Source: Octopus sinensis (lineage: Eukaryota). From it: DNA of 64,000 nucleotides. Shown here in pieces: positions 29,640 to 49,198 of the stretch. The notes beneath the pieces are model-generated. The model was not told the DNA's origin. It saw only the letters and a program-made list of their open reading frames with translations, and did no database searches. The stretch spans positions 2,418,001 to 2,482,000 of the forward strand of contig NC_043026.1 in the NCBI RefSeq assembly GCF_006345805.1. The letters run 5' to 3'. The translations under genes and the position numbers were made by a program. The first letter of the stretch is position 1; every line of letters begins with the position of its first letter.

Positions 29640-30000
29640 ATTGACCATGTTCGGTGCACTCTTGTACGCCACTTGGTATTTGGCTTGGCGGCCCAAGAGG
29701 CAGTCTGGTGGTGAGGGTCAGTGCCAACTGTGTTACTGCGTTACTCACAGAAGTGGGGAACCTTGAAAGGATGTAGTAAATGTGACAGCAGTGGTTGTAA
29801 GTAACTGGGAGGGGCTAGCAAGAGCTCTGCACACAGGCAGCTTGCTCCAGTGGTTACAGTGAGTGCTGGTTGAGTATTCCACAGACACTTTGTACTTGTA
29901 GTTATATGAGGAGAGGGTTGTATATGGGAAGTAAAATAATCTAGATGGATGAGGAAAGAGGGAGTCTGGAAGACGAAATGGAACCAAGACATTGACAGAC
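29640..30000 (-). mobile_element. Possible Penelope GIY-YIG remnant
   Basis: Weak: FYFPYTTLS... then IYYI...SVSNAVTQL, loosely like IYxFxC..YVGxTxxxL. Confidence 0.25.
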
Positions 30001-30050
30001 ATTGACTGTTGCTGTCCATGGACTGAAACAGGGAAATGATGATTGACATT

Positions 30051-30462
30051 TACTCTTACTCTTTACTCTTTTACTTGTTTCAGTCATTTGACTGCGGCCA
30101 TGCTGGAGCACCGCCTTTAATCGAGCAACTCGACCCCAGGACTTATTCTTTTGTAAGCCCAGTACTTATTCTATCGGTCTCTTTCGCCCAACAGCTAAGT
30201 AATGGGGACGTAAACACACCAGCATCGGTTATCAAGCAATGGTGGGGGGACAAACACAGACACGCAAACACACACACACATACATATACACATATATACG
30301 ACGGGCTTCTTTCAGTTTCCGTCTACCAAATCCACTCACAAGGCATTGGTCGGCCCGAGGCTATAGTAGAAGATACTTGCCCAAGGTGCCACGCAATGGG
30401 ACTGAACCCAGAACCATGTGGTTGGTAAACAAGCTACTTACCACACAGCCACTCCTACGCCT
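30051..30462 (-). mobile_element. SINE family A, full length
   Basis: Near-consensus head, body and tail. Confidence 0.92.
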
Positions 30463-31024
30463 ATTGATTACTTACCCTGAATCAATTCGTTATCCTGTCA
30501 CCTGGCAGGTCAATAATGGTGGATTTTGTTGCATTGTCTATGTTTATTGTTTGTCTTCTGCAACATAAACAATCTTCAATATAATTGTCCTAAATCATGT
30601 TATTCCACCCACTTTGCTTTCCTCATCCCTCCAGCCTATATTCTTCTTCTAACACTCACATAACCGTTCTACTTAGATGTATTAATTTCTCTTAATTCCT
30701 CTTCAGTTAATTGCTCTTCCTCAATTTTCACCTTTACCGTTATTTTGGTTCAAATTTACAAGCGACGACAGCTAAGGGGCGATAATTCCCCACAAACATA
30801 GAAGAGTTACCCCCCTTGAGGGAAATGTCAGTTTGAAGAAACGTAAATATCTAAATTTGTTCAATCTGTTCAAGACTGGAGTCGAGACTGGAGGCCTGAA
30901 GTAGCGGCGTGGGACCAGGGAAGCTGAGGGAAGACACCACCTTATGACGACTCATACCGTTTAACGAATATTAATGCATCACTTCATTTATTATAATTCT
31001 TTTGTCATTTTTGATATTAATTGA

Positions 31025-31094
31025 TATCTATCTTTCTATCTGTCTGTCTGTCTATCTATCTGTCTGTCTATCTATCTGTCTGTCTGTCTATCTG

Positions 31095-31129
<35 letters not shown>

Positions 31130-31200
31130 GTCTGTCTGTCTATCTGTCTGTCTATCTATCTATCTATCTATCTGTCTGTCTATCTATCTATCTATCGGTG

Positions 31201-31241
<41 letters not shown>

Positions 31242-31292
31242 GTCTATCTATCTGTCTATCTGTCTATCTATTTATCTATCTATCTACCTATG

Positions 31293-31340
<48 letters not shown>
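31025..31340. repeat. (TCTA/TCTG)n and (TA)n microsatellite
   Basis: Direct observation. Confidence 0.95.
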
Positions 31341-31343
<3 letters not shown>

Positions 31344-31586
31344 TCATCATCATCATCATCATCATTTAGCGTCCGTTCTCCATGCTAGCATGGGTTGGAT
31401 GGTTCACCTGGGGTCTGTGAAACCAGAAGGCTGCACCAGGCCCAGTCTGATCTGGCAATGTTTCTACGGCTGGATGCCCTTCCTAACACCAACCACTCCG
31501 TGAGTGTACTGGGTGCTTTTTACGTGCCACCGGCACGGGGGCCAGGCGAGGCTGGCAACGGCCACGAACGGATGGTGCTTTTTACG

Positions 31587-31590
<4 letters not shown>
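31340..31590 (-). mobile_element. RTE LINE 3'-UTR fragment
   Basis: (cat)n plus reverse complement of the RTE tail. Confidence 0.85.
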
Positions 31591-31638
<48 letters not shown>

Positions 31639-31898
31639 TAATTAGATAGATATACAGTAACATGCAAAAGTCTTCATCTACTTTAAACTCGTGTAAATTT
31701 CTACCAATTGCCAACCTATAAGTCGATGTTTCACATTGTGTTTTTTACAGATGAAACATTGGCCCTGTTGGAGTCATTTCCATACCTAATCCTTATATTT
31801 TGTAGTCGGGGTTCTGAATGAGAGGCGAAGATGCGAGACGACCACCAAAAACGGTCATGCAAAAGTTTTCAGCCACCTCACAGAAACCAATCAAGATA

Positions 31899-32812
31899 CA
31901 GTGTTTGAAAACAGAAAAATGTCTATAATGAAAATTTATTGCATAATGTTCATTTCAGAAATTTACTGAACATTGTTAATATCTTGTAGCTTGCTTACCA
32001 ACCACATGGTTCCGGGTTCAGTCCCACTGCGTGGCATCTTGGGCAAGTGTCTTCTGCTATAGCCCCGGGCCGACCAATGCCTTGTGAGTGGATTTGGTAG
32101 ACGGAAACTGAAAGAAGCCCGTCATATATATGTATATATATATATGTGTATGTGTGTGTTTGTGTGTCTGTGTTTGTCCCCCTAGCATTGCTTGACAACC
32201 GATGCTGGTGATTTTACGTCCCCGTCACTTAGTGGTTCGGCAAAAGAGACCGATAGAATAAGTACTAGGCTTACAAAGAATAAGTCCCGGGGTCGATTTG
32301 CTTGACTAAAGGTGGTGCTCCAGCATGGCCGCAGTCAAATGACTGAAACAAGTAAAAGAGTAAAAGAGTTAAGAGAGTATCTCGTGTGGCTTCCTTTAGC
32401 TTGAAAAATTGCTTCAATGTACCTGAGAAGAGATGTGTACAAATCCTTCACCATCTTCACAGGTATGAGATGCCATTCTCTGTGGCTGATCTCCCACAAC
32501 TCTTCAAGATTGCATGGATTCTTCTGACAAACACTTCTCTTCTGTTCTGTCCACATTTGCTCGATGATGTCAGGGCTCTGAGCTGGACAATCTTTAAATA
32601 ACGGTAACACCTTCATCAGCCAGACTCTGTAGTGTTGAACATAATCTGTGGCACAGACCTCTGTCATGCTGAAAAATCTCACCTTCATCCAAGTCTTGTA
32701 TCAAATTGTCCTTCAGCAACTGAATGTATTTGGCATTGTTCAAGTTATCGTCAATTTTAACTAACTTTCTCGAACCATCAATTTTTGTGTATCCCCAAAG
32801 CATCATGTAATG
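31899..32812 (-). mobile_element. Tc1 (DD34E) transposon 3' half, interrupted by a SINE
   Basis: MLWG...FQHD...CPAQSPD-IIEQMW...AKGSHTRY*; probable terminal TA|CAGTG at 31897-31903. Confidence 0.8.
31986..32368 (+). mobile_element. SINE family A inserted into Tc1
   Basis: Near-consensus body with slightly truncated head, ending gtaaaagagtaaaagag. Confidence 0.92.
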
Positions 32813-32870
32813 TGGATCATTTTGCTTTCCTGGAGGCCTTCTAGCAAGTTCTCACTTATTATATATATAT

Positions 32871-33917
32871 ACTAGCATTATGACCCGTCGTTGCCGGGTC
32901 ATAGTGCTAGTGCATGTATATATGTGTATATATATGTGTACATATTACAAGTACATTTATATATATACATCTACACATAAAATACAAAATACAAAGTTAT
33001 ATCTTGATATCGCTAGTAATAACAATACTCAAAATATATAACAGATTGGAATTGTAGGCCCGTCTCTTGCAATTTCGATCAATTGTATCTTGTCCTACCT
33101 CTTGTATAGAAGTGTGGCTACAATCCAGCCTACCTCTACTTCTGGGGGGGGGGGACATTTTAAATTTTTTTCCGGGAAGTCCTACATCCCAGATATAAGG
33201 GTAAAAATAAAATATTTCCACTTTACAAGGTTCGAGTCGATTACTTCCTTGCACGCTCCGTTGACTCGAACCTTGCTTCAATTGTGGCAAATTTACCGCC
33301 TCTGGTTAGATACTTGATATCTTTCATAGTCGCACCAAGACACTTTTCAATGGTGCTTTACTCCAGGTGTTCAAATCTTTTTTCTCTACATTGTATACTT
33401 TATAGACAATAGGCTTTTCTTTAATTTAATTTTTTATTATCCATCTGGACTATTCCATTTCTGCATGCTAATTTTATTTTTAATTTATTCCCATTCATGT
33501 GAAACCACTTATTCAAGTTCAAGTCATTGATGCAATTTTATACCAATTGCTATTTTTACTTTTGTTATGTTACGATTATATTATACTTTAGTTTGATTTT
33601 AATTATTACTTACTACATATAATTCAATTGTTATTATTATCTCTAATTTTTATTGTTAAAGTGAAAGTATCTGACATAAAATAGAGAAATGTTTTTGTTT
33701 CACTTTTAACACATAATACTGAAATAGTGGAGAAGATATGATATTGCTATGGGCTCGCTGTAGGCAAGAAGTTGAACATTTTTTTTGCCCATGAAACTAC
33801 ATGGACCCTAAGTAAGGCATGTGTAAAATTTGAATGAAATTGGTTGTGTAGTTCTCAAGTTTTAGGGAAACACACAGACAGATAGACACACATTCTCAGT
33901 TTTATATATAGAGAGAT
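32871..33917 (+). mobile_element. Non-autonomous Helitron-like element (ACTAG...acagacag...tatatagagagat type)
   Basis: 5' ACTAGcattatgacccg/cgggtcatagtgctag hairpin; 3' aaatttgaatgaaattgg...acagacagatagac...ttttatatatagagagat, the end pattern of Lep1-like Helitrons. Confidence 0.65.
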
Positions 33918-34388
33918 ACACACACATATACATACATACATACATACATACATACACACATAAACATATATATAAATACATATATATATATAAATATATA
34001 TATGTACATACATGTATATGTGTATATATATATGTGTGTGTGTGTATGTGTGTATGTATGTATGTATGTGTGTGTATGCATGTATGTGTGTGTGTATGTA
34101 TGTGTGTGTGTGTGCATGTAAGTATGTATATATGCGTGTGTGTGTGTGTATGTGTGTGTATGTATGTGTGTGTGTATGTGTGTGTATGTATGTATGAATG
34201 TATATATGTATGTGTATGTATGTGTGTGTGTATGTATGTATGTATGTATGTGTGTGTGTGCATGTAAGTATGTATATATGCGCGTGTGTGTGTATGTGTG
34301 TGTGTATGTATGTGTGTGTGTATGTGTGTGTGTATGTATGTATGTATGAATGTATGTATGTATGTGTATGTATGTATGTGTGTATGTA

Positions 34389-34428
<40 letters not shown>
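33918..34428. repeat. (TA)/(TG)/(TATG)n compound microsatellite
   Basis: Direct observation. Confidence 0.95.
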
Positions 34429-34585
34429 AAATTCCACTCGTTACTCAACCCGAACCTATATTAGAAGACACTTGTCCAAGGCGCCACACATTTGGGTCAA
34501 AATCAGCTTTCAAATCACAGCCAGGACATTACTTGTTGTTGTTGCTGTTGTTGTTGTTGCTGACTTGTCGTTCGTTTTTAAACGT

Positions 34586-34611
34586 ATTTCCTTTTTTTTC
34601 TTTTAATCTAG
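34586..34611 (+). other. Probable splice acceptor of the giant exon
   Basis: atttccttttttttcttttaatctAG polypyrimidine tract; in-frame stop at 34815 before ATG 34845, so 34612-34844 would be 5' UTR. Confidence 0.5.
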
Positions 34612-34844
34612 ATTCAAGCCTGATTTGAAACCCATTCACTGTTCATTGTATTGACTGCTTGGAGAGGGAGAGAGAGGGAGAGAGGGAGAGAGAGAGAGAA
34701 AATAATAGAAAGAAGCGAAATACAATAACAACAGAAGAAAAATAAACAACAAACAAACAAAGAACAAAAGAGCAAAATCCAAAACTATCAGGAAAGGCAA
34801 AAAATATAATACGTTGATTCCTTAACAATTTGCTAATTGAGATA

Positions 34845-37730
34845 ATGAAGCCGTCGTCGACTGAGAGAAGTCTTCAAGACACAAAAGACAACTGGGACAA
34901 TGTGAATGATGCCGACAGCGACGGTGAGATTGCAGAACTTGGTAACGATGACGATTTACTTGCGGATCCTAGCAACCTCGGTCGGATGCTGCAAACTATT
35001 CCTAAAGGCAAATACTCAGAAACGCAGAGGGACGCTGAAATTTACTGCAGCAGCCAGCAGTATATGTCGAAGGAATTTCTGACACAGACCGACGGGGCCA
35101 AATGGCAGATATCGGGTCAAATCGATGACAAAATTAACACCAACAATGCCTTGCGTGATTGTTTGGGTCTTTACAAGTCACAAGAAAGCATTTGGCAGAA
35201 TAGTGACGAGGACCTTGTTGATAGGGAGGAGGAAGAAGAGGAGGATAGAAGCCAGAACCCTAATTATACCCCGACAGCCGTTGACTTTATTCACGAACCT
35301 ATCCCACATATTTGGGACCTTTCTTCTTGTGGTTCTACAAATCTGACAAACAGGGTTGATTTTAACATTCCGAACTCATCGGATGACTCTGAAACGTGCA
35401 AGGGTAAAAGCCCGGACTCAATCGAAATAATGGCACCAGATTCTCAGCTCCAAAAATTTGCTCCGTGTTTTGTCACAAGCAGTTTGGATGATAGGGACGA
35501 TGCCCCTACATCCACTTTGAACTCACCGTTTAAGATATTTCAAAGTCACGTTAAACCCTGCGAGGATTTAGATTGTAACAGGCTCCTACACCAGCCAAGT
35601 GTTACTCATCGATCTAAAGACAGGGAATTGCAAGATTCACCGAAGAAGAATACACCTAACCAGAACAGATTCGATCACGAGTCTTGTGATGGTTCTAAAC
35701 TCGACTTGGACGAAGTTTGTGAGCTGCCATTTAGTGAAGGTAACGCCGAGGCGTGTGGTTATCAAAATTCATACTCATCTTGCATTACTGTGAGTAGTGA
35801 TGATGAAAATACTTACGACAGTTCGCTCAAATCACACCATTACTATAGCAACAGATATTCACCATCTGTCGATACGCTCCAGAGAAAGTGTCATTTAAGT
35901 GAAACCGATATCACTACTCCCACCCCTGATCTTCCAGATAATGTGCTGCAAGTTTCTTATGAAGGCCACCAGAAAAATGAACGCGATCACAAGCACCAAC
36001 ACGACGACCTCATTGTAGTAAATAAATTGGAAGCTTACAAAGAGACGTTTGTGTTGAGTCACGGGACTAGTAATGAGACATGCAGAAGTTTTACACCAGA
36101 AACACAACACCAATCTCAATTGTGCAACATTGTAAAACCCTCACAGCATCCGGGTCTCAACCACTTATCTGTATTTCGCCCTCGAACCTCTCCTCCTCAG
36201 AGCGCCAGTGTCGTTAACTGTGTTGCTACGCTGCCTTCGCTTCCTCAGTCTATTGTTCGTTGGGACAATGCCTCGGGTTGCAGTTCAACAGACGACATGA
36301 AAGGAAACAGCAAGCCAGTATTTAAAAACCTGAATATTTTGGATGACCGACCAACCTATCCAGGAATAACAGACTCTTCAGAAAAAATAACCGAAGAGTC
36401 TTTAGGCAGACCAGAAAACATCGGTAATATATTAGTAAAAAATCCTCAGCTCGTAGCAAACACAAACAAAGATACATCTACATCCGCATGCACAAAAGCA
36501 TATGCACACACAACCACAGATCTAGATACAAATACAATCATAAATACAAACACTGACCGGTCCACAGTTAAGACTGGCAAAAGTGAAACGCAATGTAGTC
36601 TGCCAAGATTTTCTACTACAGAAAAAACGCAGAGATTTCCGAATCAAGTCGACAACTCCTCCCTGAACTCAAACCCGAGGGACTATCGAACTATCCCCAA
36701 CTGGGACCCTGTTGCTGTTACAAGAAATACTGTTATTACAGGGGACAATCGTAGCATGAAGAAGCTCCCCGAAGAGAAAACCCCTCACAGCGAGGGCAGA
36801 ATCGTGAAGGTTGTTCAGCGAGACACTGACGAAACTGATGCAAGTGAAAAATGTATTAATGATAATAACTTACTAAATGTCGATGAGAAGTATCATAGAG
36901 AGGATGTATATAATGATGTATATAATGATGCCACTACATTATATGGATCACAGGATGGTAAAGATATCAAAAATAAAACTATTCGTCATAACCAATATAC
37001 CGATAACACGCTTACATGGGGAGATGCATGTAAAGTTATCAACCCCTTGTATGAAACATGGGATAATAAAGATATGGAAAACGGAAGATGTACAAACCTC
37101 GGCTGCAAGAATAATGAAAGTATTCCCTCGAAAGATAGATATAAATCTAAAAGCGAAATCGAGAAAGAAGACAGAAGCGAAGAAAAGGAAGAAGAATCGG
37201 TTAAAAGCAACAGCAACAATAATAATGAAGATGCTGATGAATGTAATAATGTAGAAGAAACCGAAGAAAAGTGTGACCTCGTTGATACTCTGTCTCTCAA
37301 CGCAGAATCTAGAGACAGTGTTAATCATTCTGGTGTTTGTAGTCTGAAGTTGGATAAGAGAAACTACTTCAGAAACAGCGACGATGATTTATTAGCTGTG
37401 ACCGTTGGAGAAAAGAATTATTCTGATGCCATCGTCCCGTCTTACTATACTGCAGCGGCTGTAGTAAGTGTGGGAAGGGACGATTGTCAGATGTACGGTT
37501 CACAGAGGGAGGGGGACAGCTACAGCCAGAGTAATAGTAGTAGCTACATCTTCGATGACTTTGATTGCATGAATTCAGCCTCGCAGAACGAGACCTTTCA
37601 TTTTAAAACTCAGACAGAGGAAAACCAATTGAAGAAGAAGAAGAAGAAGAAGAAGAAGAAGAAGAAGAAGGAAGAAGAGGAGGGGGAGGAGGAGAATCTA
37701 CAAAACCCCATACAAGCAACAATGTTTTAG
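34845..37730 (+). CDS. N-terminal part of an uncharacterised, probably disordered Asp/Ser/Asn/Glu-rich protein
   Basis: 2.9-kb stop-free non-repeat frame, first ATG at 34845; no recognisable domain; overlaps the open -1 frame of the next ORF from 37607. Confidence 0.85.
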   Translation: MKPSSTERSLQDTKDNWDNVNDADSDGEIAELGNDDDLLADPSNLGRMLQTIPKGKYSETQRDAEIYCSSQQYMSKEFLTQTDGAKWQISGQIDDKINTNNALRDCLGLYKSQESIWQNSDEDLVDREEEEEEDRSQNPNYTPTAVDFIHEPIPHIWDLSSCGSTNLTNRVDFNIPNSSDDSETCKGKSPDSIEIMAPDSQLQKFAPCFVTSSLDDRDDAPTSTLNSPFKIFQSHVKPCEDLDCNRLLHQPSVTHRSKDRELQDSPKKNTPNQNRFDHESCDGSKLDLDEVCELPFSEGNAEACGYQNSYSSCITVSSDDENTYDSSLKSHHYYSNRYSPSVDTLQRKCHLSETDITTPTPDLPDNVLQVSYEGHQKNERDHKHQHDDLIVVNKLEAYKETFVLSHGTSNETCRSFTPETQHQSQLCNIVKPSQHPGLNHLSVFRPRTSPPQSASVVNCVATLPSLPQSIVRWDNASGCSSTDDMKGNSKPVFKNLNILDDRPTYPGITDSSEKITEESLGRPENIGNILVKNPQLVANTNKDTSTSACTKAYAHTTTDLDTNTIINTNTDRSTVKTGKSETQCSLPRFSTTEKTQRFPNQVDNSSLNSNPRDYRTIPNWDPVAVTRNTVITGDNRSMKKLPEEKTPHSEGRIVKVVQRDTDETDASEKCINDNNLLNVDEKYHREDVYNDVYNDATTLYGSQDGKDIKNKTIRHNQYTDNTLTWGDACKVINPLYETWDNKDMENGRCTNLGCKNNESIPSKDRYKSKSEIEKEDRSEEKEEESVKSNSNNNNEDADECNNVEETEEKCDLVDTLSLNAESRDSVNHSGVCSLKLDKRNYFRNSDDDLLAVTVGEKNYSDAIVPSYYTAAAVVSVGRDDCQMYGSQREGDSYSQSNSSSYIFDDFDCMNSASQNETFHFKTQTEENQLKKKKKKKKKKKKKEEEEGEEENLQNPIQATMF

Positions 37731-40700
37731 CAGAAACAGAACCAAAGCATGAGCCCATCAGCGAGCCATCTTATTGCAATAGTCTTACTAGTGAAAAAGC
37801 AAACTTCCTTCATGCAAGCAATTCACAGATGGATTTATTTAACGTCTGCAGTGACCTTTTGCCAGATTATAGCCCCACGAAAAAAGGTGAGGCAAGAAAT
37901 GGTCGATTTTATCCTAATATCCTGGATGTCGGGGAGAACCAAATAAGTGAAACAATAGAAGAGCAAGTAGAAAGCAATAACATTTGTTTAGCAAAACCAA
38001 CACCTATTTGTCAGCCCATTAATATTCTTCCCGAATGCGAAAATACCATCAAACGTAGCTCAGAGACGAATACTCTAAACCGTAGCCAAAAAAATATTGT
38101 CGAAACGTGCTCGAATGATTTTCGCAATTTCTGCAATAATGCGTGTGTTCTCGTCAATGAAGAAGAGGAGGTTAAAATAACAGGTCAATCCTCAAAGAAT
38201 ATGAACTCTGATTATAAAAACTTGGACGTAAGTCGAAATCTGATGGGCGCATGTAACAGTAATTCAGATGTAGGTGAGAATCGGCCAAACACAAATTACG
38301 GAAACTCAGGTAAAAGCGATAACAAACAAGAAGTATCATACAAAAGTAAAAGTAGTTTAACTGAAACAGAACCAACATGCCAACCCATTGAAGTTCTATC
38401 TTATTGCGATGATGCAGCCAACAAGAAGATAAGCCTTCCTTATACAAGTAGTTCACAGACGAGTATCTTCAACGGCTGCAGTGACGTCTCAGACTATAGT
38501 AAAAACAATAAAGATGTAATCAGAACTGATCGATTTTATCCCCAAATCCAGGTTGACGAGGAAAACCGAAAAAGTGAAAACAAAGAGAAGTACGTGGAAA
38601 GCAATAACAATTGTTCAGCAAAACTAGGGTTGAGGTGTCAACCCATTGTTATTCCACCTAATGACAGAGATGCCGTCATATATAATTCACAGGTAAATGT
38701 CCTTAACTACAACAGAAGTGATATTGTTGAAGTGTGTTCGAAAAACGTTCGTAATAATGTTCCTGTTGACGACAATGCAGAAGAAGGGGATAACGAAGCG
38801 AGCCACTCTACAAACATGAACACAAATTATAGGACTTTAAGCGTTAAACGAAATGCAACTGACGAAGATTACAGTAACCCTGATGGAATGCAGACGAATT
38901 CCAGGAGGGGAAATTCAGATGAAAGTGAAGATCCAATGAACGCCAATCGCAGTAAGACAGACGTAAAGGGAAAGTGGACAAACACGAATGTTCGTGGAAA
39001 CTTAATGAATTCGAATTATGTAAATTTGCATATAAGTGATAATTGTTTGAATGAAAATTGCAGGAACTCAGAAGTTTGCGGAAATCAGACGAACACGAAT
39101 CACAAAAAGGAGAAGGCAGAGGAAGAGAGGGAAAAAGAAGAAGATGAATCTATGAAACCCGACAACAGCACGAGTGGTTTAGCTGAAACGGACCCTAGAT
39201 GCCAACCCACTGAAGTTCCATTTCTGTACTATCCTGCAGCCAGCGAGAAAGAAAATGTTTATCACAGAAGCTGTTCCAAGATGAATAATCTTAAGGGTTG
39301 TTGTGAGGCTGAATTAGACGATGAACACACCAATAAAGATGTACTCAGAAATGATGAATTTTATCTTAAAATCCAAGTAGATGAGAAGAGGAGGAATGAA
39401 AAGAAAGCAGGGAGTGTGGAAAGCAATGACTGCTATTTAGCAAAATCACAGTTTATTAGTCAATCCGTTGTTGATTCACTTAAAAGCAGAGATGTCCTGG
39501 AACACAGTAGAAGTGACGCTGGTAAAACATGCTCGAATAACGCTAGCAGTTTTTACAATGATAGAGCTGTCTTCACCAATTCAGATGAGGATTATGAAAG
39601 AGCCGAATCCTTAATGAGCACCAACGTGAATAACAGAAATTCTGACGTAAGTGGAGAACAAACGATGAGAGTCAATCACGGAAATTTGTACGTAAGTGGA
39701 GAACAAACGATGAGAGTCAATCACGGAAATTTGTACGTAAGTGGAGAACAAACGATCCCAAATTACGGAAACTTGGATGTAAGCGGCCAACAACAAAACG
39801 GAGACTCAAACTTGAACGGAACTCGAATGAAAACAAGCTACAATAAACCTGAAGGAAAAGAAGAAGAAGAAGAAGAAGAAGAAGAAGAAGAAGAAGAAGA
39901 AGAAGACGACCAACAAGGACAAGAATGTTTGGAAGTCGACGATAGAAAGAAAAGTTTAGTTGGAATGGAATGTCATCGTGATGTCGTTCTGTTGACGTGT
40001 AGTGATGCAACCATTGAAAGAACAAGCGTTTCTCACACAAGCAGTTCACAGATGGTCGTCTTTAACGACGGCACTAACGCTGTCTCAGATTATGGTCCCA
40101 CCCACGAAGATGTGACAAGAAATGATCGATTTCACCCTACAATCCTGGCTGGCGAAGAGGATCGAAGAAGCAAAACTGAAGGGGAGGAGTGTGTGGAAGT
40201 CGATAACAGCAGCATACGTTTAGAACCAGCAGACTCGTGTAAAGGTGTCACATGTAGATCACAGGCGAATATCCTTAACCAGAACAGAAATGATATTATC
40301 GAAGCGTGTTCAGGTGAGGTTCACAATTTCTGCAATGACGTCCCTATCCTCAAAAATGTAGAAGAGTTCAAAGAAAAAGTCCAATCCTTAAAGCGTACGA
40401 ACTCAGATTATGGAAATCCGCACGCAAGTCAAAATCCGACGAAAGAAAATCCCAACAACCCAAATGTATGTGGAAATCGAATGAATGCTAATTACGGAAC
40501 ATCAGGTGTAAATGGAAATTTGACAAACAAAAACTGTGGAAAGTCAGACATCACTAAAATTCCAACAACAGAAGAAAATTGTGGGAAATCGAAAGAAAGT
40601 GGCAAACTGGTCGACGCAAATTTCAATGAGTTAAACGTAACTACAAATCAGATGAACACAAGTTATAGAATCTCAGAAGTAAGTGGAAAACTAACGAAGG

Positions 40701-43538
40701 AAAAGCTCAGCATCACGGAAGACGGCAACGATGAGGAAAAAGAAAAATCTAATAAAATTCACAAAAGTACGAAAAATTTAGTTGAAACGGAACGGAAGCG
40801 TCATCTGGTTGAAGTTTCGTTAATGTGCAATGAATGCAACGGGAATGCAAACTTTTCTCACACAAGCAGTTCACAGACAAAGATTGTTAATGGCTGTAGT
40901 TGCACCAATAAAAATGTTGTCAGAAACGACGAGGAGAAGCAAAGAAGACAGAAGGTCGAAGAGCACGAGAAAAACAATAAGAGAAGAAAAGCAGAGTGGA
41001 AGTGTCAGTCTGTTGTAAGTCTATCCAGAGACAGAGATGTTAGCATACACGGCTTACAGACGAATATCATGAACTGTGGCAGAAACGGTTTTGTCCAAAC
41101 GTTTGCGAATGATGTCCTTAATTTCTGCAATAATGTCCATGCAGTCGGCAATGTAGAAGAAAAGGAAAACGAATCAGGGCATTGTTCAGCGAGGATAAAC
41201 TCAAAATATGGAGATTCAGGCGTTTGTCGAAACCCGACGAACGCAGACGTATGTGGAAATTGGAATAACACAAATGATGGAAACTCGGTAAATTCAAAAT
41301 GCAAAAAATCAGAAGCGAACGGGAGTCAGACAAAAGCAGACGACAAAACCCCAGAAAAAGGAGATAAGGAAGGAGAAGGGAAACTAGTAAGGAAAATCCT
41401 CAAAGGCAACGGTGAAATAGAAACAGACCGTCACACCATTGAAGGTCATTACGGAAATAATGCAGCCAGCGACAGAGCCAACATCTCTTACAGAAGCAAT
41501 TCACAGATGGATAGATTTAATGGTGACACCAATAGTGACGTCACCAATGATCGATTTTATCCCCAAACCCAGGAAGACAAGGAAGCCCGAATAAGCCGAA
41601 AAGAAGGAGGGCATACGGAAACTGATAACTGCCGCAGCTCTTTAGCAAATCTTGGTTCCCTATGTCAACCAGTTGGTATTCCACTTATTTGCAGTGATGC
41701 CATAAGCAGCTTGCAGACGAATGTCTTAAATCAGATCAGTAATGACCGTGTCGAAGGGGGTTCAAATAACGTTTACTCTTTTTGCAATAATGTCCCTGCT
41801 CTCATCAGGGCACAAGATGACGAAACAAATCAAAGCTCAAACAGGATGAATGCAACTAACGGAAACTTGGATGTAAATCGAATTACATCCAATTGCGGTA
41901 AGTCAAACGACATTGGGAAGCGGACGAATTCCATCTGCGGGAAATTAGAGGCAGAAGAAAATCGGGTGGACGCCAGTTGTGGAAACTGGAATGTAAATGG
42001 AAAAAGAACGAGTGAATATTGTGAAAATATGCACGTAAGTGGAGATCAACCGGGAAACGCAGACGTAAGGGAACATTCTAGAAATTCGAATTACGTTTAC
42101 TCAGATATAAGCGGGGATAGAGTGAATTTATATCACGGAAAATTAGAAAACGGAGATAAGGAAGGAGAAGAAATGTCAATGAAAATCCACAAAAGCAACA
42201 ATGATTTAGTTGAAACGGAACCGGAGCGCCATCCAAGAGAGGTTCCATTTCCATGCAATATTACAGGAAACGCGAAAGCAAACTTGTCTGAGGTAAACAG
42301 CTCAAAGGTGAATAGCTTCAACGGTTGCAGAGACGTTGTCTCAGATACTGGCCTCGTCATTAAAAATGCAACTAGAGATGATCGATTTTATCTGAAAACC
42401 ATGCCTGGCGATGAAGATGAAAGGGAAAAGGAAGTGGAAGTAGAATACGTGAAAACGTTCAATAGCAACAGTTCTTTAGCAAAACTAGAGTTAAGATGTC
42501 AGCCCGTTGATAATTCAACTCTGGATTCGCATACCACAGTACATAAGTCACAGGAGGCTAGCTTAAGCAACAACAGCAGCAGTGATATCGTCGTTGGACG
42601 TTCGAATGTCAGTCGAAATTCTGGCAGGGCTATCCCTTTTCTTAACAATGCGGAAGATAATTCACCAAGAAAGTTCTCAAACGGAACTAACCCAAATTAC
42701 GGAAACTCAGACGTAAATGGAAATTTAACGAATAGAAATTACGGAAATTCGGAATATGAAGATAAGGATCAAGAAATATCTAAGAAAATCGACAACAGCA
42801 ACAATTATTTAGGTGAAGCGCAACCTAAGCATAATCCCACGAAGGTCCCATTTCTGTGCAATGCTGCAACAAGCAAGAGGACAGACTTTCCTTACACAAG
42901 CAATTCACTGATTCACAACTCTCATGGCTGCACTGATGTTGTCTCAGATTATAACCTCATTGAGGAAGATGTGGCCAGAGATGATCGATTTTCTCCTAAA
43001 ACCCAGGCAAACAAGGAGGCCCGAGGAGGTCAAAAGGAAGGAGAGTATGTGAAATCCGACAAGAGCAGAAACAGCTCTTTACCTACAATAAGTCCTGTTT
43101 GCCAGCCCGTGGCTAATCCACCTGGATGCAGTGATGCCATAAATTGCTCACAGAGCAGTAATGATGCTGTGAAAAAGAGTTCGAATGACGTTCGTAGTTG
43201 CCGCAGTAATACTCTCTCTGTTCTCGACGATGCTAACGACGGTGGCTTAATAGGAGAGATATCGAACAGAACGAATAGAAATTGCAAAACCATGGATGCG
43301 GATGGAAATCGGACGAATGTAAAGAACCTCGCTCAAGATTCAAGTGGAAAGTCGACAAATGCAAGTTACGGAATCTCAGACTTAAATAGGAATCACGCGA
43401 ATACACCGCTATTCCGGATTGAAAATCCCAATTGCTCCGATGATCAGCGTGTACCTGCGGCCAATGACAAGACAGCCTCCTTCCCGATCATCCTCTCAAT
43501 CGATCAGCAAGAATCTTTCTATTCTGATCTCCCACCAA
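37607..43538 (+). CDS. Repeat-rich C-terminal part of the same protein (about 8 diverged 200-280-aa units)
   Basis: Frame open from 37607 (upstream of the listed Met 37829) to 43627; recurring ETExxCQP, SSSQ..FNGC, RxDRFYP, CSNxxxxFCNN and NYGN motifs; GTAAGT donor at 43539. Confidence 0.9.
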
Positions 43539-43544
43539 GTAAGT
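43539..43544 (+). other. Splice donor (phase 1)
   Basis: CCA CCA A|GTAAGT consensus donor; the remaining ORF codons run into a SINE-E remnant. Confidence 0.7.
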
Positions 43545-43554
43545 ATTATTATTT

Positions 43555-43690
43555 TGGCTGTCTTTACGTTCTGAGTTCAAATTCCGCCTTTCACCCTTTC
43601 GGGGTCGATAATGTAAGTACCATTTGAGCACTGGAGTCGATATAATCGATTTACTCCCCTCTCCTCTAATGCTGGCCTGACACCAAAATT
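43555..43690 (+). mobile_element. SINE family E remnant in the intron
   Basis: ctttacgttctgagttcaaattccgcc...cctttcggggtcgataatgtaagtacc. Confidence 0.8.
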
Positions 43691-43811
43691 TGAAAAGCAA
43701 AATATTGTTGTTGTTGTTCTTGTCATGTCAAGCGCATTTGAATCCCTCCACGTTTCCCTGCGATCCATTATATCTGGAACTCATTTTTAAAAGCTTTGTA
43801 TCCTACAACAG

Positions 43812-43867
43812 ATGCTGCACATACGCTAGACAATGTTTCTTTTTCTGTCACATACTCGTCCCTATAG
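43812..43867 (+). CDS. Candidate short terminal coding exon (…N-AAHTLDNVSFSVTYSSL*)
   Basis: tttgtatcctacaacAG acceptor at 43811 is phase-compatible with the donor at 43539; weak pyrimidine tract, so speculative. Confidence 0.25.
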
Positions 43868-44134
43868 TCATAATTAACGTCCAATTTTATCTTTTCTTCG
43901 CCAACACTGCCCGACAGACGACGGGCTTCTTTCAGTTTCCGCTTAGCACATCTTCTCACAAAGCTTCAGTCGGCCCTGAGCTATACTAGAACACACTCGC
44001 CGAAGGCGCTGCGCAGTAGCACTGAACCCAATGACCACAAGATTGAAAAGCAAACTTCTAACCACACAGCCACGTCTGTAAATAGTTTCTTCTTCATTGA
44101 TTTTAGAAGAGAAATTCGTGTGTGTGTGTGTGTG

Positions 44135-44690
44135 TGTGTGTGTGGTCAACGATGACGCTTATAGCAGCGACGACGGGAGTATTAACTCGTGTCCGAGTAA
44201 CTAATCTGTAGCGAGTGATTAAACCTCTTCATCCTGAAGGGTGCGAAGAGTGCCGGTGCCTGAGGAGGCTGTTAAGGCCAAGTGTTGTATAGAAGAGCCG
44301 GGGGGCGGCATATATTGCAGGGGAGGGTTGGTTGGGAGAGGAAGTGCGAATCGCTCTTTGCGCCTTCGACATCCTATTTCTTCCTCTCGTCTGTTATATT
44401 CCATCTTGTCCGTTCCCTTCACGATGTCATGCCGCTGTTTTGGCGGTCACTTGGCGAGTGTCTCCCAGGTATTTGGACTAATGGAGCAACGGAAGAGAGT
44501 GGCCTTGAGCTCGTCTCGAAAACGGAATTCACAAATGGCCTTCAGGTGATATTGTTTAGGGTGGATCATGTATTGCGATCATCAGAACCAAGCACTCGGT
44601 CATCCGCCTTCATCAGCGGCACCCTTGGCATTGGTGACATGCTGGACCTGGTTACAGGTGTTGCAGTGGATTGCCGGATGCTTCAGGTAT
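44135..44690 (-). mobile_element. RTE (BovB-like) LINE 3' end
   Basis: Across frameshifts: RFRDELKATLFRCSISPNTWETLA-SDRQ..RHDIVKG..MEYNRR...RRKER...CNICR..LFYTTLGLNSLLRHRH; ends in (CA)n. Confidence 0.75.
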
Positions 44691-44699
44691 AATCGAGAT

Positions 44700-44706
44700 C
44701 TATCTT

Positions 44707-44788
<82 letters not shown>

Positions 44789-44822
44789 GATCTATCTATC
44801 TATCTATCTATCTATATATCTA

Positions 44823-44872
<50 letters not shown>

Positions 44873-44877
44873 AGTCA

Positions 44878-44912
<35 letters not shown>

Positions 44913-45906
44913 AGTCTGTCTGTCTGTCTGTCTGTCTGTCAGTCAGTCTGTCTGTCTTTCTGTCTGTCAGTCAGTCTATCTGTCTGTCTGTCTGTCTGTC
45001 TAGCTAGCTAGATGCCTAGCTAGCTAGATGCCTAGCTAACTTTTATACACCCCCCCCCACACACACACTACATATGTGGGAAATTTTGATGAAACTTGAC
45101 ACGGGAATAGAACTCATGCCTGGAAACCTCATGGCATACTCAGATTGTTGAAAAAAAATCGTTGCTAAGGCCCCTGGAAGGTATCCTTATATATATCGAA
45201 TGTATTTCATTTTAACAGCCAAGGGAAATAACCCATTCATTTTTCCGAAATCATTTGATATAAATCAAATTGTGTATACTTTATTTCTTAGTATTTGAAA
45301 TGTGAGAGTTATTTTCACAATTTCTCCAGTACAACCCTTAAACAAGTAAATAGTAGTTTTCTTAACAATAGATCCACTCATTTCAGTTAGTGACTTATTC
45401 ACGAATATACCAACACTAGCGCTGCTGAGGGTAATATTATCTGCGAATGCACAAAAGCTCTTTTCAGAGTTATTTACTATGAATTGTTATTATCTCATAT
45501 CTGATTAGCCTGTTATTACATAACATGCCTCAAGATTTTAGTATACATACCTTATTGGTATTTCCCCCTAAGTTAAAGTCCTTTCTTGTATATAGCCCTT
45601 TCTGGGTCAACAATACTTGAATTCTTACTATAAGGTAACTAATTTCATGTTATAATTCTTATTATAAGGTAACTAATTTCATGTTATTATATAACTGACT
45701 TCACAATTTGCATATTCATAACTTATTAGGAATTCCTAAAAGCAAGGTCCTGTGTAAGACAGTTCGGTATTCTCTGTAAATGCACAAAAGCCATTTTAAG
45801 GGCTACATACTTTGTATTGTTGTTATTGGATTAGCGAAACAGTTATGAGAACGGAACTAAGAGATAAGCCCTGCTTTCCCGAGAATTCCCGGGTACGTTA
45901 GCTAGT
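44700..45906 (-). mobile_element. Non-autonomous Helitron-like element, opposite orientation
   Basis: Minus-strand 5' ACTAGctaacgtacccgggaattctcggg; 3' side gtgtcaagtttcatcaaaatttccc followed by expanded (AGAC)/(AGAT)n. The 3' boundary is uncertain. Confidence 0.55.
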
Positions 45907-45918
45907 ATGTATATGTAT

Positions 45919-46479
45919 ATTGCACCTCCCCACACACACGCACTGACAGGGAAGCTATCCGCCCCATGACCGTCTTTGGAATGTACATATATATATATAT
46001 ATATAAAAAGGAAATGAAGAAAATGCTGACAAAATAATTTAAGTAAGGGAGAGTGTATTTAATTAGGTGAAAGTTCTTTTCTTTAAACAAAAAAAAGAGA
46101 AAAATTGGGTTAGAATACAATGTACATTTTTACCGGTTGCGCATTTGTTATGCTTATCAAAAGATATTTTGAGTGAGATAGAGTTCCTTTCTGATTGATT
46201 TTTTTCTCTTATCTGACTTTTGATAAGATAAGTCAGATAAGAGAAAAAAATCAATCAGAAAGGAACTCTATCTCACTCAAAATATCTTTTGATAAGCATA
46301 ACAAATGCGCAACCGGTAAAAATGTACATTGTATTCTAACCCAATTTTTCTCTTTTTTTGTTTAAAAAAAGAACTTTCACCTAATTAAATACACTCTCCC
46401 TTACTTAAATTATTTTGTCAGCATTTTCTTCATTTCCTTTTTTTATATATCACAACTCGTGTTCCACATCTCCTTTTTT

Positions 46480-46543
<64 letters not shown>

Positions 46544-46609
46544 ATTTTCCAAAGACGGTCATGGGGCGGTTAACTTCCCTGTCAGTGCGTGTGTGTGGGG
46601 GAGGTGCAA
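45919..46609. repeat. About 690-bp palindrome with near-perfect 220-bp inner arms
   Basis: 46001-46219 mirrors 46230-46450 across a 10-nt spacer; outer arms 45919-45985 / 46540-46609. Confidence 0.92.
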
Positions 46610-46927
46610 TGGTGCAGTGGTTAGGGCAGCGGACTCGCAGTCGTAGGATCGCGGTATCGATTCCCAGACCGGGCAAGTGTTTATAGAGCAAAAAATCTAA
46701 AGTTCCACGTGGCTTCAGCAGGGGGTGGTGGCGAATCCTGCTGTACTCTTTCGCGTATGTATGTATGTATGTATGTATGTATGTATGTATGTATGTATGT
46801 ATGTATGTGTGCGTGTGTGTGTATGTATGTATGTATGCATGCATGCATGTATGTATGTATGTATGTATGTGTGTATGTATGAATGTATGTATGTATGTAT
46901 GTATGTATGTATGTATGTGTGTATGTA

Positions 46928-46958
<31 letters not shown>

Positions 46959-47275
46959 ATGTATGTATGTATGTATGTGTGTATGTATGTATGTATGTAT
47001 GTATGTATGTATGTATGTGTGTGTGTGTATGTATGCATGTATGTATGTATGTATGTATGTGTGTGTATGTGTGTGTATGTATGTATGTATGTATGTATGT
47101 GTGTGTGTATGTATGTATGTATGTATGTATGTATGTGTGTGTGTATGTATGTATGTATGTATGTATGTATGTATGTATGTATGTATGTCTATATGTATGT
47201 ATGTGTGTATGTATGTGTGTATGTATGTATGTATGTAGGTAGGTATGTATGTATGTATATATGTATGTATGTATG

Positions 47276-47309
<34 letters not shown>

Positions 47310-48374
47310 TGTATGTATGTGTGTGTGTATGTATGTATGTTTGTATATATGTATGTATGTATGTATGTATGTGTGTATGTATGTGTGTGTGTATGTATGT
47401 ATGTATGTATGTATGTATGTATGTATGTATGTGTGTGTATGTGTGTGTGTATGTATGTATGTATATGTATGTATGTATGTATATGTATGTATGTATTCAT
47501 GCATGTATGCATGCATGTATGTGTGTATGTATGTATGTATGTATGTGTGTTTGTGTATGTGTATGTATGTGCACGCGCGTGTGTGTGTGTGTGTGTTTTA
47601 ATAGCTATGACGACTTTTCCACGTGAAAACTGTTTCGTTTTTATCAACAATCTTAAATTAATTCTGTTGCTAAGCAACTAACGAATTAGCGGAGTCATTA
47701 GGACAAATCGCCTGGATCTCTGTGCACTGAGTTCAAATCTCGCTAAAGTCAACTTTATCTTTCAGAACAGATGAGAAACCACCAGTCCCGGAAGGTGGAC
47801 TCAATACGTGGGGCCACATATTAAACTCGGTACTTTGTGGTTTCTGAGTTTTTCAAATTCCTTACCTGGTTTAACAAATACTATTTTACTCTTGGCTGAC
47901 TTTAGTGGAAATCGTTTTGTGCCACCATTCTTTTCGCCACTCTCTCAGACTCAAAAAAAATTTTAATTAGTAAAAAAAGAGGCGGTGTTATCCTCCTATC
48001 GCTAATTAAACGAGTAAAACAAAAAAATATACATATTTACATAAAATATTTTACTGAAGCTAACAAGGGAGGCAACCCTTCAATAACCAGTCATACTCGA
48101 CATTATTATTATTGGGCTTATGTTGTTACCTCCCTTGTACATATCTTACTTGTTTCGGTCTTTAGACTGCGGGTCATGCTGGCCACTGTCTTGATGGTTC
48201 GAGTCCAACAAATCGACCGCAAGGCTTACTTTTTCTAAGCCTGGTACTCATTCTGTTAGTTTTTTAAAAAAAATTTTTTGTCGAACCATTGAGTTACGAG
48301 TATGTAAACCAACCAAACTGGTTGTCAAGTAATAAGGCTGGGAGGACAACCACAAAAACACACACACACACACA

Positions 48375-48444
<70 letters not shown>

Positions 48445-48815
48445 ATTTTCCAAAGACGGTCATGGGGCGGTTAACTTCCCTGTCAGTGCGTGTGTGTGGG
48501 GGAGGTGCAATGGTGCAGTGGTTAGGGCAGCGGACTCGCAGTCGTAGGATCGCGGTATCGATTCCCAGACCAGGCAAGTGTTTATAGAGCAAAAAATCTA
48601 AAGTTCCACGTGGCTTCAGCAGGGGGTGGTGGCGAATCCTGCTGTACTCTTTCGCGTATGTATGTATGTATGTATGTATGTATGTATTATGTATGTATGT
48701 GTGTGTGTGTATGTATGTTGTATGTATGTATGCATGTATGTATGTATGTATGTATGTGTGTATGTATGAATGTATGTATGTATGTATGTATGTATGTATG
48801 TATGTGGTGTATGTA

Positions 48816-48846
<31 letters not shown>

Positions 48847-49164: not shown

Positions 49165-49198
<34 letters not shown>

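What the first reader, a model, noticed from the sequence alone, without database searches (positions are those of the whole stretch)
34612..43538. About 8.9-kb single exon encoding an unrecognised protein of about 2,900 aa
Nearly 8.7 kb of coding frame with one break cannot arise by chance in AT-rich DNA. It is free of the SINEs and microsatellites that saturate the flanks, has plausible splice signals at both ends, and shows no domain I recognise. Composition (N, S, D, E, K with spaced Cys) suggests a large, mostly disordered, acidic and possibly lineage-specific protein. CpG is visibly common here, unlike in the decayed repeats.
Basis: partly seen in the sequence, partly recalled or inferred. 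Interest (0 to 1): 0.8.

Follow-up and report, generated by a model that had tools for sequence, protein, structure and literature searches.

The report
Giant-exon RAD51AP2-like gene in octopus
The 8.9-kb open exon is real and is the first coding exon of a 2,975-residue, fast-evolving, disordered octopus protein that ends in the short motif the vertebrate meiotic proteins RAD51AP1 and RAD51AP2 use to bind the recombinase RAD51, so it is probably an unreported invertebrate relative of RAD51AP2.

Summary
Window 34818-43627 is open apart from one frame change at 37627-37628. A second assembly copy of the locus, 515 kb away and inverted, lacks that 1-bp deletion and reads 2,944 codons without a stop.

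The two copies form a 46.5-kb contig-end overlap bounded by N gaps, most likely unmerged alleles. They differ by 9 synonymous and 9 non-synonymous changes (pN/pS 0.25).

The exon splits into a unique 955-aa N-terminal part and eight diverged tandem modules of 200-270 aa. It is acidic (pI 4.9), predicted disordered, and has no Pfam, PDB or paralogue match.

The gene does not stop at this exon. An Octopus bimaculoides predicted protein (82% identical over units 4-8) shows that the GT donor at 43539 splices to two small exons inside the window, 53986-54075 and 59455-59573.

The last exon carries a RAD51-interacting motif (Pfam PF15696, sub-threshold). All four residues shown by mutagenesis to be essential are present at the right spacing, along with the RAD51AP2-type Tyr-Ile-Lys.

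Human RAD51AP2 has the same layout: one huge exon followed by two short ones, the last encoding the motif. Octopus RAD51AP1 lies elsewhere, on contig C7.

Verdict: a RAD51AP2-like gene, a new member of a known kind. Expression and RAD51 binding are untested.

The parts
34612..43538 (+). Giant first coding exon. 34612-34844 looks like 5'UTR with no ATG; CDS starts at ATG 34845.
   Evidence: Acceptor AG at 34610-11, in-frame TGA at 34815-17, ATG at 34845, donor GT at 43539-40. ORFs. The intact counterpart is 2,944 codons.
37625..37631 (+). Site of the frame break. CCAATTG here, CCAAATTG in the second assembly copy: one A is missing from an A run.
   Evidence: Pairwise alignments.
34845..37708 (+). 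Unique N-terminal region of about 955 aa, ending in a poly-Glu run encoded by (GAA)n at 37631-37678.
   Evidence: The unit HMM finds no repeat unit here. No Pfam, PDB or library match. AlphaFold2 pLDDT 31.
37709..38338 (+). Repeat module 1
   Evidence: Self-BLAST and alignment A1.
38339..39160 (+). Repeat module 2
39161..39937 (+). Repeat module 3. Contains the 45-bp x2.8 tandem repeat at 39629-39756 and the poly-Glu (AAG)n at 39858-39906, which is 24 nt shorter than in the other copy.
39938..40759 (+). Repeat module 4. The O. bimaculoides model XP_014790363.1 starts at its Met.
40760..41395 (+). Repeat module 5
41396..42187 (+). Repeat module 6
42188..42790 (+). Repeat module 7
42791..43537 (+). 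Repeat module 8, with a divergent tail ending ...ESFYSDLPP
43539..43544 (+). Splice donor GTAAGT. The open frame continues for 29 more codons into a 5'-truncated SINE and is intronic there.
   Evidence: Sequence. SINE alignment. The orthologue leaves the frame exactly here.
53986..54075 (+). Coding exon 2 (90 nt, phase 1 to phase 1), encoding (K)RHFNYKGNFRWKKPLEDCSVTVRTNSAET.
   Evidence: AG at 53984-85 and GT at 54076-77. Matches the orthologue's tail. The joined CDS stays in frame.
59455..59573 (+). Terminal coding exon (39 codons including the split one, plus TGA at 59571-59573).
   Evidence: AG at 59453-54. The last 34 aa are identical in O. bimaculoides.
59493..59546 (+). RAD51-interacting motif core, LRIGLSKRQKIPALHPYI. 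It overlaps a basic KR-x10-KRRR cluster that resembles a bipartite nuclear localisation signal.
   Evidence: Pfam PF15696, E 0.0086, 16.7 bits. BLASTP to the octopus RAD51AP1 motif, E 8e-9. Critical residues from PMC1636435. Pattern test.
23173..64000 (.). Part of a 46.5-kb block present twice in the assembly. The second copy is inverted at G000:C30:2944764-2989631.
   Evidence: 98.2-99.9% identity. Each copy abuts a 100-N gap at opposite ends.

Best explanation
This is the main exon of an octopus RAD51AP2-like gene. The gene has three coding exons in the window: 34845-43538, 53986-54075 and 59455-59573. With the intact copy of the first exon they give a 2,975-residue, 333-kDa, acidic protein that is predicted to be disordered. 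Its extreme C-terminus, encoded wholly by the short last exon, carries the RAD51-interacting motif shared by vertebrate RAD51AP1 and RAD51AP2. By inference, this motif docks the protein onto RAD51, as it does in those proteins, and the overlapping basic cluster would bring it into the nucleus. The large body is a unique 955-aa region plus eight diverged 200-270-aa modules that repeat the same four or five short conserved blocks. It evolves fast and would act as a flexible, multivalent platform at RAD51 sites, most plausibly in meiosis as for RAD51AP2. What the modules bind is unknown. The frame break in the window copy is a 1-bp deletion that is absent from the second, probably allelic, assembly copy. 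It is either a consensus error or a null allele, not a feature of the gene.
For: Shown: the open frame and its improbability. Purifying selection: 9 synonymous against 9 non-synonymous differences between the copies, pN/pS 0.25, binomial P 0.0045. Median dN/dS between modules is 0.62. Neutral change of 0.1 per site would create about 26 stops in the repeat part. Orthologue: XP_014790363.1 of O. bimaculoides, collinear with units 4-8, 82% identity over 1,279 columns, with only in-frame indels. Columns conserved among the eight modules are also more conserved between species (88% against 80%, P 3e-4). Splicing: the orthologue's tail is encoded by two window exons with canonical AG/GT sites, and the joined CDS is in frame. 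Motif: PF15696 is the only meaningful Pfam hit. BLASTP to the motif of the octopus RAD51AP1 orthologue on C7 gives E 8e-9. The four residues whose mutation abolishes RAD51 binding (RAD51AP1 R316, L319, L328, H329; RAD51AP2 L1134, L1143, H1144) are present with identical spacing. The RAD51AP2-specific Tyr-Leu-Lys after LHP appears as Tyr-Ile-Lys. That a-priori pattern occurs in 10 of 20,000 shuffles of the protein. Gene layout: human RAD51AP2 has one exon of 1,083 aa plus exons of 27 and 49 aa, the last encoding the motif, with 11 of the 49 residues found only in primates. Octopus has 2,906 + 30 + 39 aa. Like RAD51AP2, the body has no domain and the C-terminal tail is basic (pI 10.5). Inferred: RAD51 binding, nuclear location and a meiotic role.
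Against: The Pfam score (16.3-16.7 bits) is below the family's cut-off of 25, and the similarity covers only about 18 residues. I could not obtain a vertebrate RAD51AP2 sequence, so neither the large exon nor exon 2 was compared with it. Orthology rests on the motif plus gene layout. The splice pattern comes from a computational gene model in another species and from splice-site logic, not from transcripts. No expression data were available. The first 1,700 residues have no annotated counterpart anywhere. Nothing shows what the eight modules do. The window copy itself is frameshifted.
Confidence: 0.7

Rival explanations
1. An octopod-specific orphan gene that is not descended from RAD51AP2. 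It either acquired a RAD51AP1-type terminal exon by exon shuffling, or resembles the motif by convergence. It might still bind RAD51, but it would not be an orthologue.
For: The body has no homologue outside Octopus. Motif similarity is short and sub-threshold in Pfam. RAD51AP2 was described as vertebrate-specific. The modules arose by lineage-specific amplification, with dS of about 0.87 between units.
Against: The whole three-coding-exon layout matches human RAD51AP2, including the sizes of the two short exons. The motif has the AP2-type Tyr-[Leu/Ile]-Lys rather than the Thr-Val-Lys of the octopus RAD51AP1. It is only 47% identical to the octopus RAD51AP1 motif, so it is not a recent copy. 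RAD51AP2 bodies are known to turn over quickly: the human and mouse proteins differ by a 154-aa block.
Confidence: 0.2
2. A decaying pseudogene or non-functional ORF. The frameshift in the window copy would be real and the locus dispensable.
For: The window copy has a 1-bp deletion that would truncate the protein after about 930 residues. There is no transcript evidence. The constraint on sequence is weak (dN/dS 0.62 between modules).
Against: The second copy is intact over 2,944 codons. There is an excess of synonymous differences between the copies. The O. bimaculoides counterpart is open over 1,278 residues with only in-frame indels. Even 0.1 neutral substitutions per site would give about 26 stops. 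The last 34 residues are invariant between species.
Confidence: 0.04
3. A secreted acidic, Asn/Ser/Asp-rich matrix or adhesive protein of the kind common in molluscs, with Cys-containing modules.
For: The composition is N 11.6%, S 10.9%, D+E 16.8%, Cys 3.1%, with pI 4.9, 50 N-x-S/T sequons and a modular repeat structure.
Against: There is no signal peptide and no hydrophobic segment: the maximum Kyte-Doolittle 19-residue mean is 1.18. An in-frame stop lies 27 nt before the ATG. The C-terminus is a basic NLS-like cluster plus a RAD51 motif. AlphaFold2 finds no fold that conserved cysteines could stabilise.
Confidence: 0.02

Closest known systems
RAD51AP2 (vertebrates; Kovalenko et al. 2006, PMC1636435; Ma et al. 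2022, PMC8754306)
   Same: [quoted passage not shown] The motif residues needed for binding (Leu, Leu-His) sit at the same spacing, followed by Pro-Tyr-[Leu/Ile]-Lys. The C-terminal tail is basic. The body has no domain or homologue and changes fast between species.
   Different: It is 2,975 aa against 1,159 (human) or 976 (mouse). The body is acidic and contains eight tandem 200-270-aa modules not reported for vertebrate RAD51AP2. It is found in a mollusc, whereas the family was described as vertebrate-specific. Binding to RAD51 and meiotic expression are untested here.
RAD51AP1 (octopus orthologue at G000:C7:~19.39-19.40 Mb)
   Same: It shares the core motif R-I-G-L-S-[KR]-x-Q-K-x-x-x-L-H-P at the extreme C-terminus, encoded by a short last exon.
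   Different: RAD51AP1 is small and built from many small exons. Its motif scores 42.6 bits in PF15696 against 16.7 here. It has Thr-Val-Lys, not Tyr-Ile-Lys, after LHP. There is no similarity outside the motif.
BRCA2 exon-11-type BRC repeat arrays
   Same: Analogy only: a RAD51 partner with a giant exon holding about eight tandem repeats in a disordered region.
   Different: The modules are not BRC repeats. There is no PF00634 hit. hhalign of the module motif against ten octopus BRC repeats gives probability 0.08%. Octopus BRCA2 lies on contig C7.
XP_014790363.1, 'putative uncharacterized protein DDB_G0282133' of Octopus bimaculoides
   Same: It is the orthologue of units 4-8 plus the two small exons, at 82% identity.
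   Different: It is a 5'-truncated computational model of 1,278 aa, named after a compositional resemblance to a Dictyostelium Asn-rich protein. No function or RAD51 link is annotated.

Membership tests
RAD51AP1/RAD51AP2 RAD51-interacting motif (Pfam PF15696) | Match to the family profile above its curated cut-off (25 bits) | tested here: not met
   The score is 16.7 bits, E 0.0086, covering profile positions 22-39 of 39. It is the only relevant Pfam hit but lies below the cut-off. The octopus RAD51AP1 scores 42.6 bits.
RAD51AP1/RAD51AP2 RAD51-interacting motif (Pfam PF15696) | Residues shown by mutagenesis to be required for RAD51 binding, with their spacing: Arg, Leu at +3, Leu at +12, His at +13 (RAD51AP1 R316/L319/L328/H329; RAD51AP2 L1134/L1143/H1144) | tested here: met
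   In R-IG-L-SKRQKIPA-L-H-P all four are present at identical spacing. The pattern occurs in 10 of 20,000 shuffles of the protein.
RAD51AP1/RAD51AP2 RAD51-interacting motif (Pfam PF15696) | Motif at the extreme C-terminus, encoded entirely by a short terminal exon | tested here: met
   The motif is at residues 2951-2965 of 2,975, within the 39-codon last exon 59455-59573. The paper states the same for both human genes.
RAD51AP2 | [quoted passage not shown] | tested here: met
   Here 2,906 + 30 + 39 aa with canonical splice sites. The splice pattern is supported by the O. bimaculoides model, not by transcripts.
RAD51AP2 | [quoted passage not shown] | tested here: met
   The sequence is LHP-Y-I-K (Leu replaced by Ile). 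The octopus RAD51AP1 has LHP-T-V-K.
RAD51AP2 | Sequence similarity of the large exon to vertebrate RAD51AP2 | not tested
Whole-library searches with the N-terminal 970 aa found nothing.
RAD51AP2 | Physical binding to RAD51 through the C-terminus | not testable with these tools
   This needs a pull-down or two-hybrid experiment.
RAD51AP2 | Expression restricted to meiotic tissue | not testable with these tools
   No transcript data were available. CpG observed/expected of about 0.9 only suggests an unmethylated gene that is not broadly or highly expressed.
BRCA2 (BRC repeats) | Repeat units match the BRC repeat profile or the FxTA core | tested here: not met
   There is no PF00634 hit at E<=10 in any unit. 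The locus is absent from the genome-wide BRC hits. hhalign probability is 0.08%. The BRCA2 OB fold lies on C7, not C30.
KNL1 (kinetochore scaffold with MELT repeat arrays in a giant exon) | Multiple M-[DE]-[ILVM]-[ST] motifs and N-terminal SILK/RVSF motifs | tested here: not met
   There are no MELT-like motifs, no SILK and one RVDF. Knl1_RWD_C was not found anywhere in the genome, so that part is uninformative.

The most novel reading that the evidence does not exclude
RAD51AP2 is not a vertebrate invention but an old bilaterian gene. Only its gene layout and about 20 C-terminal residues survive, while the body is rebuilt in each lineage. In octopods the body has been rebuilt by amplifying a 250-aa module eight times. 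This gives the largest known family member, and its repeated conserved blocks form a multivalent platform for a still unknown partner at meiotic RAD51 sites.
Probability: 0.45. Interest if true: 0.6.

Novelty: new member of a known kind. Interest (0 to 1): 0.5.

Why it matters
RAD51AP2 was described as specific to vertebrates and to meiosis. In mice it is needed for efficient X-Y recombination (PMC1636435, PMC8754306). A mollusc gene with the same exon layout and the same binding motif would push the family back to the bilaterian ancestor. It would also give a clean example of a protein recognisable only by a 20-residue anchor and its gene structure. It offers an eight-fold natural repeat of conserved short blocks to mine for the unknown function of the RAD51AP2 body. 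In practical terms, the O. bimaculoides protein now named after a Dictyostelium Asn-rich ORF could be re-annotated. The work also flags a 46.5-kb false duplication and a probable indel error in this assembly.

Tried and rejected
- **BRCA2.** The idea came from eight repeats in a giant exon and the resemblance of F-S-H-T-S-S-S-Q to the BRC core. It was rejected because the BRCA-2 OB1 fold and at least ten BRC repeats map to contig C7, Pfam finds no BRC repeat in any unit, and hhalign gives probability 0.08%.
- **KNL1.** Rejected because there are no MELT motifs. The RWD domain search found nothing anywhere in the genome and is uninformative.
- **Transposon or virus.** There are no terminal or long terminal repeats around the exon, only microsatellites and SINEs. 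There is no relative in viral contigs or metagenomes and no catalytic domain.
- **LC8-binding TQT/IQVD motifs.** There are 5 matches against about 2 expected. This is not significant and they are conserved in only 2 of the 8 units.
- **Further exons.** I looked for coding exons among ORFs of at least 45 codons in 43540-64000 and at least 60 codons in the 30 kb beyond the window. By eye nothing was convincing. The two real small exons became recognisable only through the orthologue.
- **Structure.** AlphaFold2 gave pLDDT 37 for module 1 with the 8-row alignment and pLDDT 31 for the N-terminal 920 aa as a single sequence. Neither showed a fold, so no fold search was run.
- **PDB sequence searches** found nothing.
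- The search for homologous proteins with a region; the genome search with an alignment; two machine errors; Pfam on a translation containing stops; the search for related loci with the unit alignment; exact look-ups of the protein.
Full report
**1. The observation.** On the + strand there are two stop-free stretches, 34818-37730 (970 codons) and 37607-43627 (2006 codons). They are one base out of register and overlap by 124 nt. A T-rich tract ends in AG at 34610-11. The next 233 nt contain no ATG. The first ATG is at 34845, 27 nt after an in-frame TGA. A consensus donor GTAAGT starts at 43539.

The other five frames of the same DNA carry 122-309 stops per 2,943 codons. Shuffles never gave an open run longer than 217 codons. 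CpG observed/expected is 0.91 in the exon against 0.39-0.45 around it. One claim is wrong: the exon contains two coding (GAA)n runs and a 45-bp tandem repeat.

**2. The break and the second copy.** A search of the window's own genome (2.72 Gb in 13,516 contigs; window = contig C30:2418001-2482000) found the same sequence again. It lies 515 kb away on the opposite strand, inside a frame open for 2,944 codons.

Over 9.8 kb the copies differ by 18 substitutions, a 24-nt (AAG)8 length difference, and one base. The window has CCAATTG where the other copy has CCAAATTG, at 37625-37631. That single base is the whole frame break.

The repeated block is 46.5 kb long. It runs from window 23173 to 5.6 kb past the window end, and matches C30:2989631-2944764 in inverted orientation. 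In the window the block starts immediately after a 100-N gap. In the other copy it ends immediately at a 100-N gap, while the opposite ends run on into unique sequence.

This is the signature of two contig ends that overlap but were not merged. The likeliest cause is two haplotypes, given 0.1-1.8% divergence and microsatellite length differences. A recent inverted duplication is not excluded. Either way an intact version of the gene exists. The deletion is either a consensus error or a null allele.

**3. Evidence for selection.** Of the 18 substitutions between the copies, 9 are synonymous, although only 20% of sites are synonymous. This gives pN/pS 0.25 and binomial P 0.0045. Simulated neutral change of 0.1 per site creates about 26 stops in the repeat half alone.

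**4. Anatomy of the product.** The first 955 residues are unique. The rest is eight tandem modules of 200-270 aa that are 30-45% identical to one another.

Each module repeats the same short blocks:
- L-x-E-T-E-P...E-V-P..C
- A-N-[FI]-S-H-T-S-S-S-Q-M..F-N-G-C
- K-D-V-x-R-N-D-R-F-Y-P
- C-Q-P
- N-F-C-N-N-V...E-E

These are followed by a variable Asn-rich tail (N-Y-G-N-x-D-V-x-G-N) and an acidic linker. Between modules, identity at codon positions 1, 2 and 3 is 0.61, 0.59 and 0.565. Median dN is 0.55, dS 0.87 and dN/dS 0.62, so constraint is weak but real.

The protein is acidic (pI 4.9) and very hydrophilic (GRAVY -1.07). It contains N 11.6%, S 10.9% and Cys 3.1%, and has no hydrophobic segment. 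AlphaFold2 gives pLDDT 37 for module 1 with the eight-row alignment, and pLDDT 31 for the N-terminal 920 aa as a single sequence. Neither shows secondary structure. This is consistent with disorder, with the caveat that the alignments are shallow.

There is no Pfam family for the body. There is no PDB relative and no paralogue in the genome. Viral contigs and metagenomes gave nothing. The 1.84-billion-protein library gave only a spurious bacterial hit for the N-terminal 970 aa.

**5. The orthologue and the rest of the gene.** The word-indexed search with the 2006-aa ORF returned one protein, XP_014790363.1 of Octopus bimaculoides. It is 1,278 aa long and named 'putative uncharacterized protein DDB_G0282133'.

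It is collinear with modules 4-8, with 82% identity over 1,279 columns and nine in-frame indels. Columns conserved among the eight modules are also better conserved between the species (88% against 80%, Fisher P 3e-4). The longest identical runs are the module blocks listed above.

After ...ESFYSDLP the orthologue leaves the window's open frame exactly at the GT donor. It continues with about 70 residues that are encoded further down the window by two exons with canonical splice sites:
- 53986-54075, with AG at 53984-85 and GT at 54076-77
- 59455-59573, with AG at 59453-54 and TGA at 59571-73

Joined to the intact first exon, the CDS is 8,928 nt. It is in frame and encodes 2,975 aa (333 kDa). 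Both small exons are identical in the second assembly copy.

The 29 codons that stay open beyond the donor belong to a 5'-truncated SINE. The O. bimaculoides model starts at a Met inside module 4, so it is 5'-truncated. Searches with the N-terminal ORF and with the full 2,944-aa ORF found nothing.

**6. What the tail is.** The last exon's only Pfam hit is PF15696, 'RAD51 interacting motif'. The match is E 0.0086 and 16.7 bits against a cut-off of 25, and covers the core LRIGLSKRQKIPALHPYI.

The same profile finds a strong match elsewhere in the genome, at C7:19402885-19402983 (40.8 bits). It ends a gene of many small exons, including ...LDDKLFERELKLAMEMS.... I take this to be the RAD51AP1 orthologue. 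BLASTP of the two tails gives 15 of 32 identities and E 8e-9.

Kovalenko et al. 2006 (PMC1636435) report the following:
- RAD51AP1 and RAD51AP2 share only this C-terminal motif.
- In both genes a short last exon encodes it.
- R316, L319, L328 and H329 of RAD51AP1, and L1134, L1143 and H1144 of RAD51AP2, are needed for RAD51 binding.
- RAD51AP2 of human, mouse and chicken share Tyr-Leu-Lys after Leu-His-Pro, and RAD51AP1 does not.
- The human RAD51AP2 ORF is one very large exon (1,083 aa) plus two small exons (27 and 49 aa, the last 11 residues found only in primates).
- The RAD51AP2 body has no motif or homologue, and the tail is strongly basic.

The octopus sequence R-I-G-L-S-K-R-Q-K-I-P-A-L-H-P-Y-I-K keeps all four essential residues at identical spacing. 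It has Tyr-Ile-Lys where the octopus RAD51AP1 has Thr-Val-Lys. It lies 10-25 residues from the C-terminus, in a 39-codon last exon that follows a 30-codon exon and a giant exon. Its tail has pI 10.5. The a-priori residue pattern occurs in 10 of 20,000 shuffles of the protein. The last 34 residues are the longest stretch identical between the two octopus species.

**7. Interpretation.** The gene is best read as a RAD51AP2-like gene. The C-terminal motif would dock on RAD51, and the overlapping KR-x10-KRRR cluster looks like a bipartite nuclear localisation signal (my own knowledge, untested).

In mouse, loss of the C-terminal 22 residues, or of four motif residues, removes RAD51AP2 from chromosome axes and impairs X-Y recombination (PMC8754306).

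The exon shows no CpG depletion. This fits the class of octopus genes that lack gene-body methylation, which are silent or variably expressed across tissues (PMC9476566). It is compatible with restricted expression but does not prove it.

The function of the eight modules is unknown. They are not BRC repeats, and the protein has no MELT motifs.

Shown: the gene structure, selection, the orthologue and the motif residues. Inferred: RAD51 binding, nuclear and meiotic role, and orthology with vertebrate RAD51AP2.

**8. Limits.** The Pfam hit is below threshold. No vertebrate RAD51AP2 sequence, cephalopod DNA other than this genome, or transcript data could be reached. The splice pattern rests on a computational model plus splice logic.

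The species is an octopus other than O. bimaculoides. From memory the assembly statistics fit O. sinensis, but this is unverified. If so, the split from O. bimaculoides is about 34 Myr old.

No paper in the searchable library links RAD51AP2 to invertebrates.

**9. Verdict.** It is not a wholly unrecognisable protein. It is a new, very large, modular member of the RAD51AP1/AP2 kind in a mollusc. Interest is moderate.

Noticed in passing
window 23173-64000 and G000:C30:2944764-2989631: A 46.5-kb block is present twice on the same scaffold in inverted orientation at 98.2-99.9% identity. Each copy abuts a 100-N gap at opposite ends (window 23073-23172; C30:2944664-2944763). This is a dovetail overlap of two contig ends, most likely unmerged haplotypes and a scaffolding error.
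   Followed up: yes
window 46476-48444 and 48376-50333: A tandem duplicate of about 1.9 kb full of (GTAT)n arrays, at about 96% identity. The stretch 50370-52773 has no long counterpart in the second assembly copy, so the two copies differ structurally here.
   Followed up: partly
window 46079-46219 / 46230-46370: A 141-nt inverted repeat, 97% complementary with a 10-nt spacer. It forms a near-perfect hairpin of unknown nature, possibly a MITE.
   Followed up: no
window 3678-4465 (+), 20715-21239 (-): Remnants of a Mos1/mariner transposase (HTH_48, Transposase_1) and of a reverse transcriptase (RVT_1). No other host gene is evident in the 64 kb.
   Followed up: partly
window 11001-30000 and 54001-64000 versus 35001-44000: The flanking DNA is strongly CpG-depleted (observed/expected 0.1-0.5), while the exon is not (0.7-1.1). 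A published octopus methylome (PMC9476566) reports that transposable elements are not methylated, so the cause of the flank depletion is unexplained.
   Followed up: partly
G000:C7:52625770-52628823 (locus L044), minus strand; G000:C8852:25112-26212: Octopus BRCA2 has at least ten BRC repeats in one 1,315-aa open exon. Eight of them are near-identical tandem units (DETVEKLQGFSTAKGQKIQINQKSLQKAQNLL), a recent amplification. A partial second copy (a BRC repeat plus OB1 with an in-frame TAG) sits on an unplaced contig.
   Followed up: partly
G000:C7:19391932-19402983 (loci L045, L046, L031): The probable RAD51AP1 orthologue of this octopus. It has many small exons and its last exon ends ...GGIRIGLSRNQKVKSLHPTVKAQH (PF15696, 42.6 bits). 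RAD51AP1 is often called vertebrate-specific.
   Followed up: partly
window 15931-16606: A simple repeat that reads as long His, Thr and Pro homopolymer runs on the minus strand. It is open in several frames purely because of its composition.
   Followed up: no
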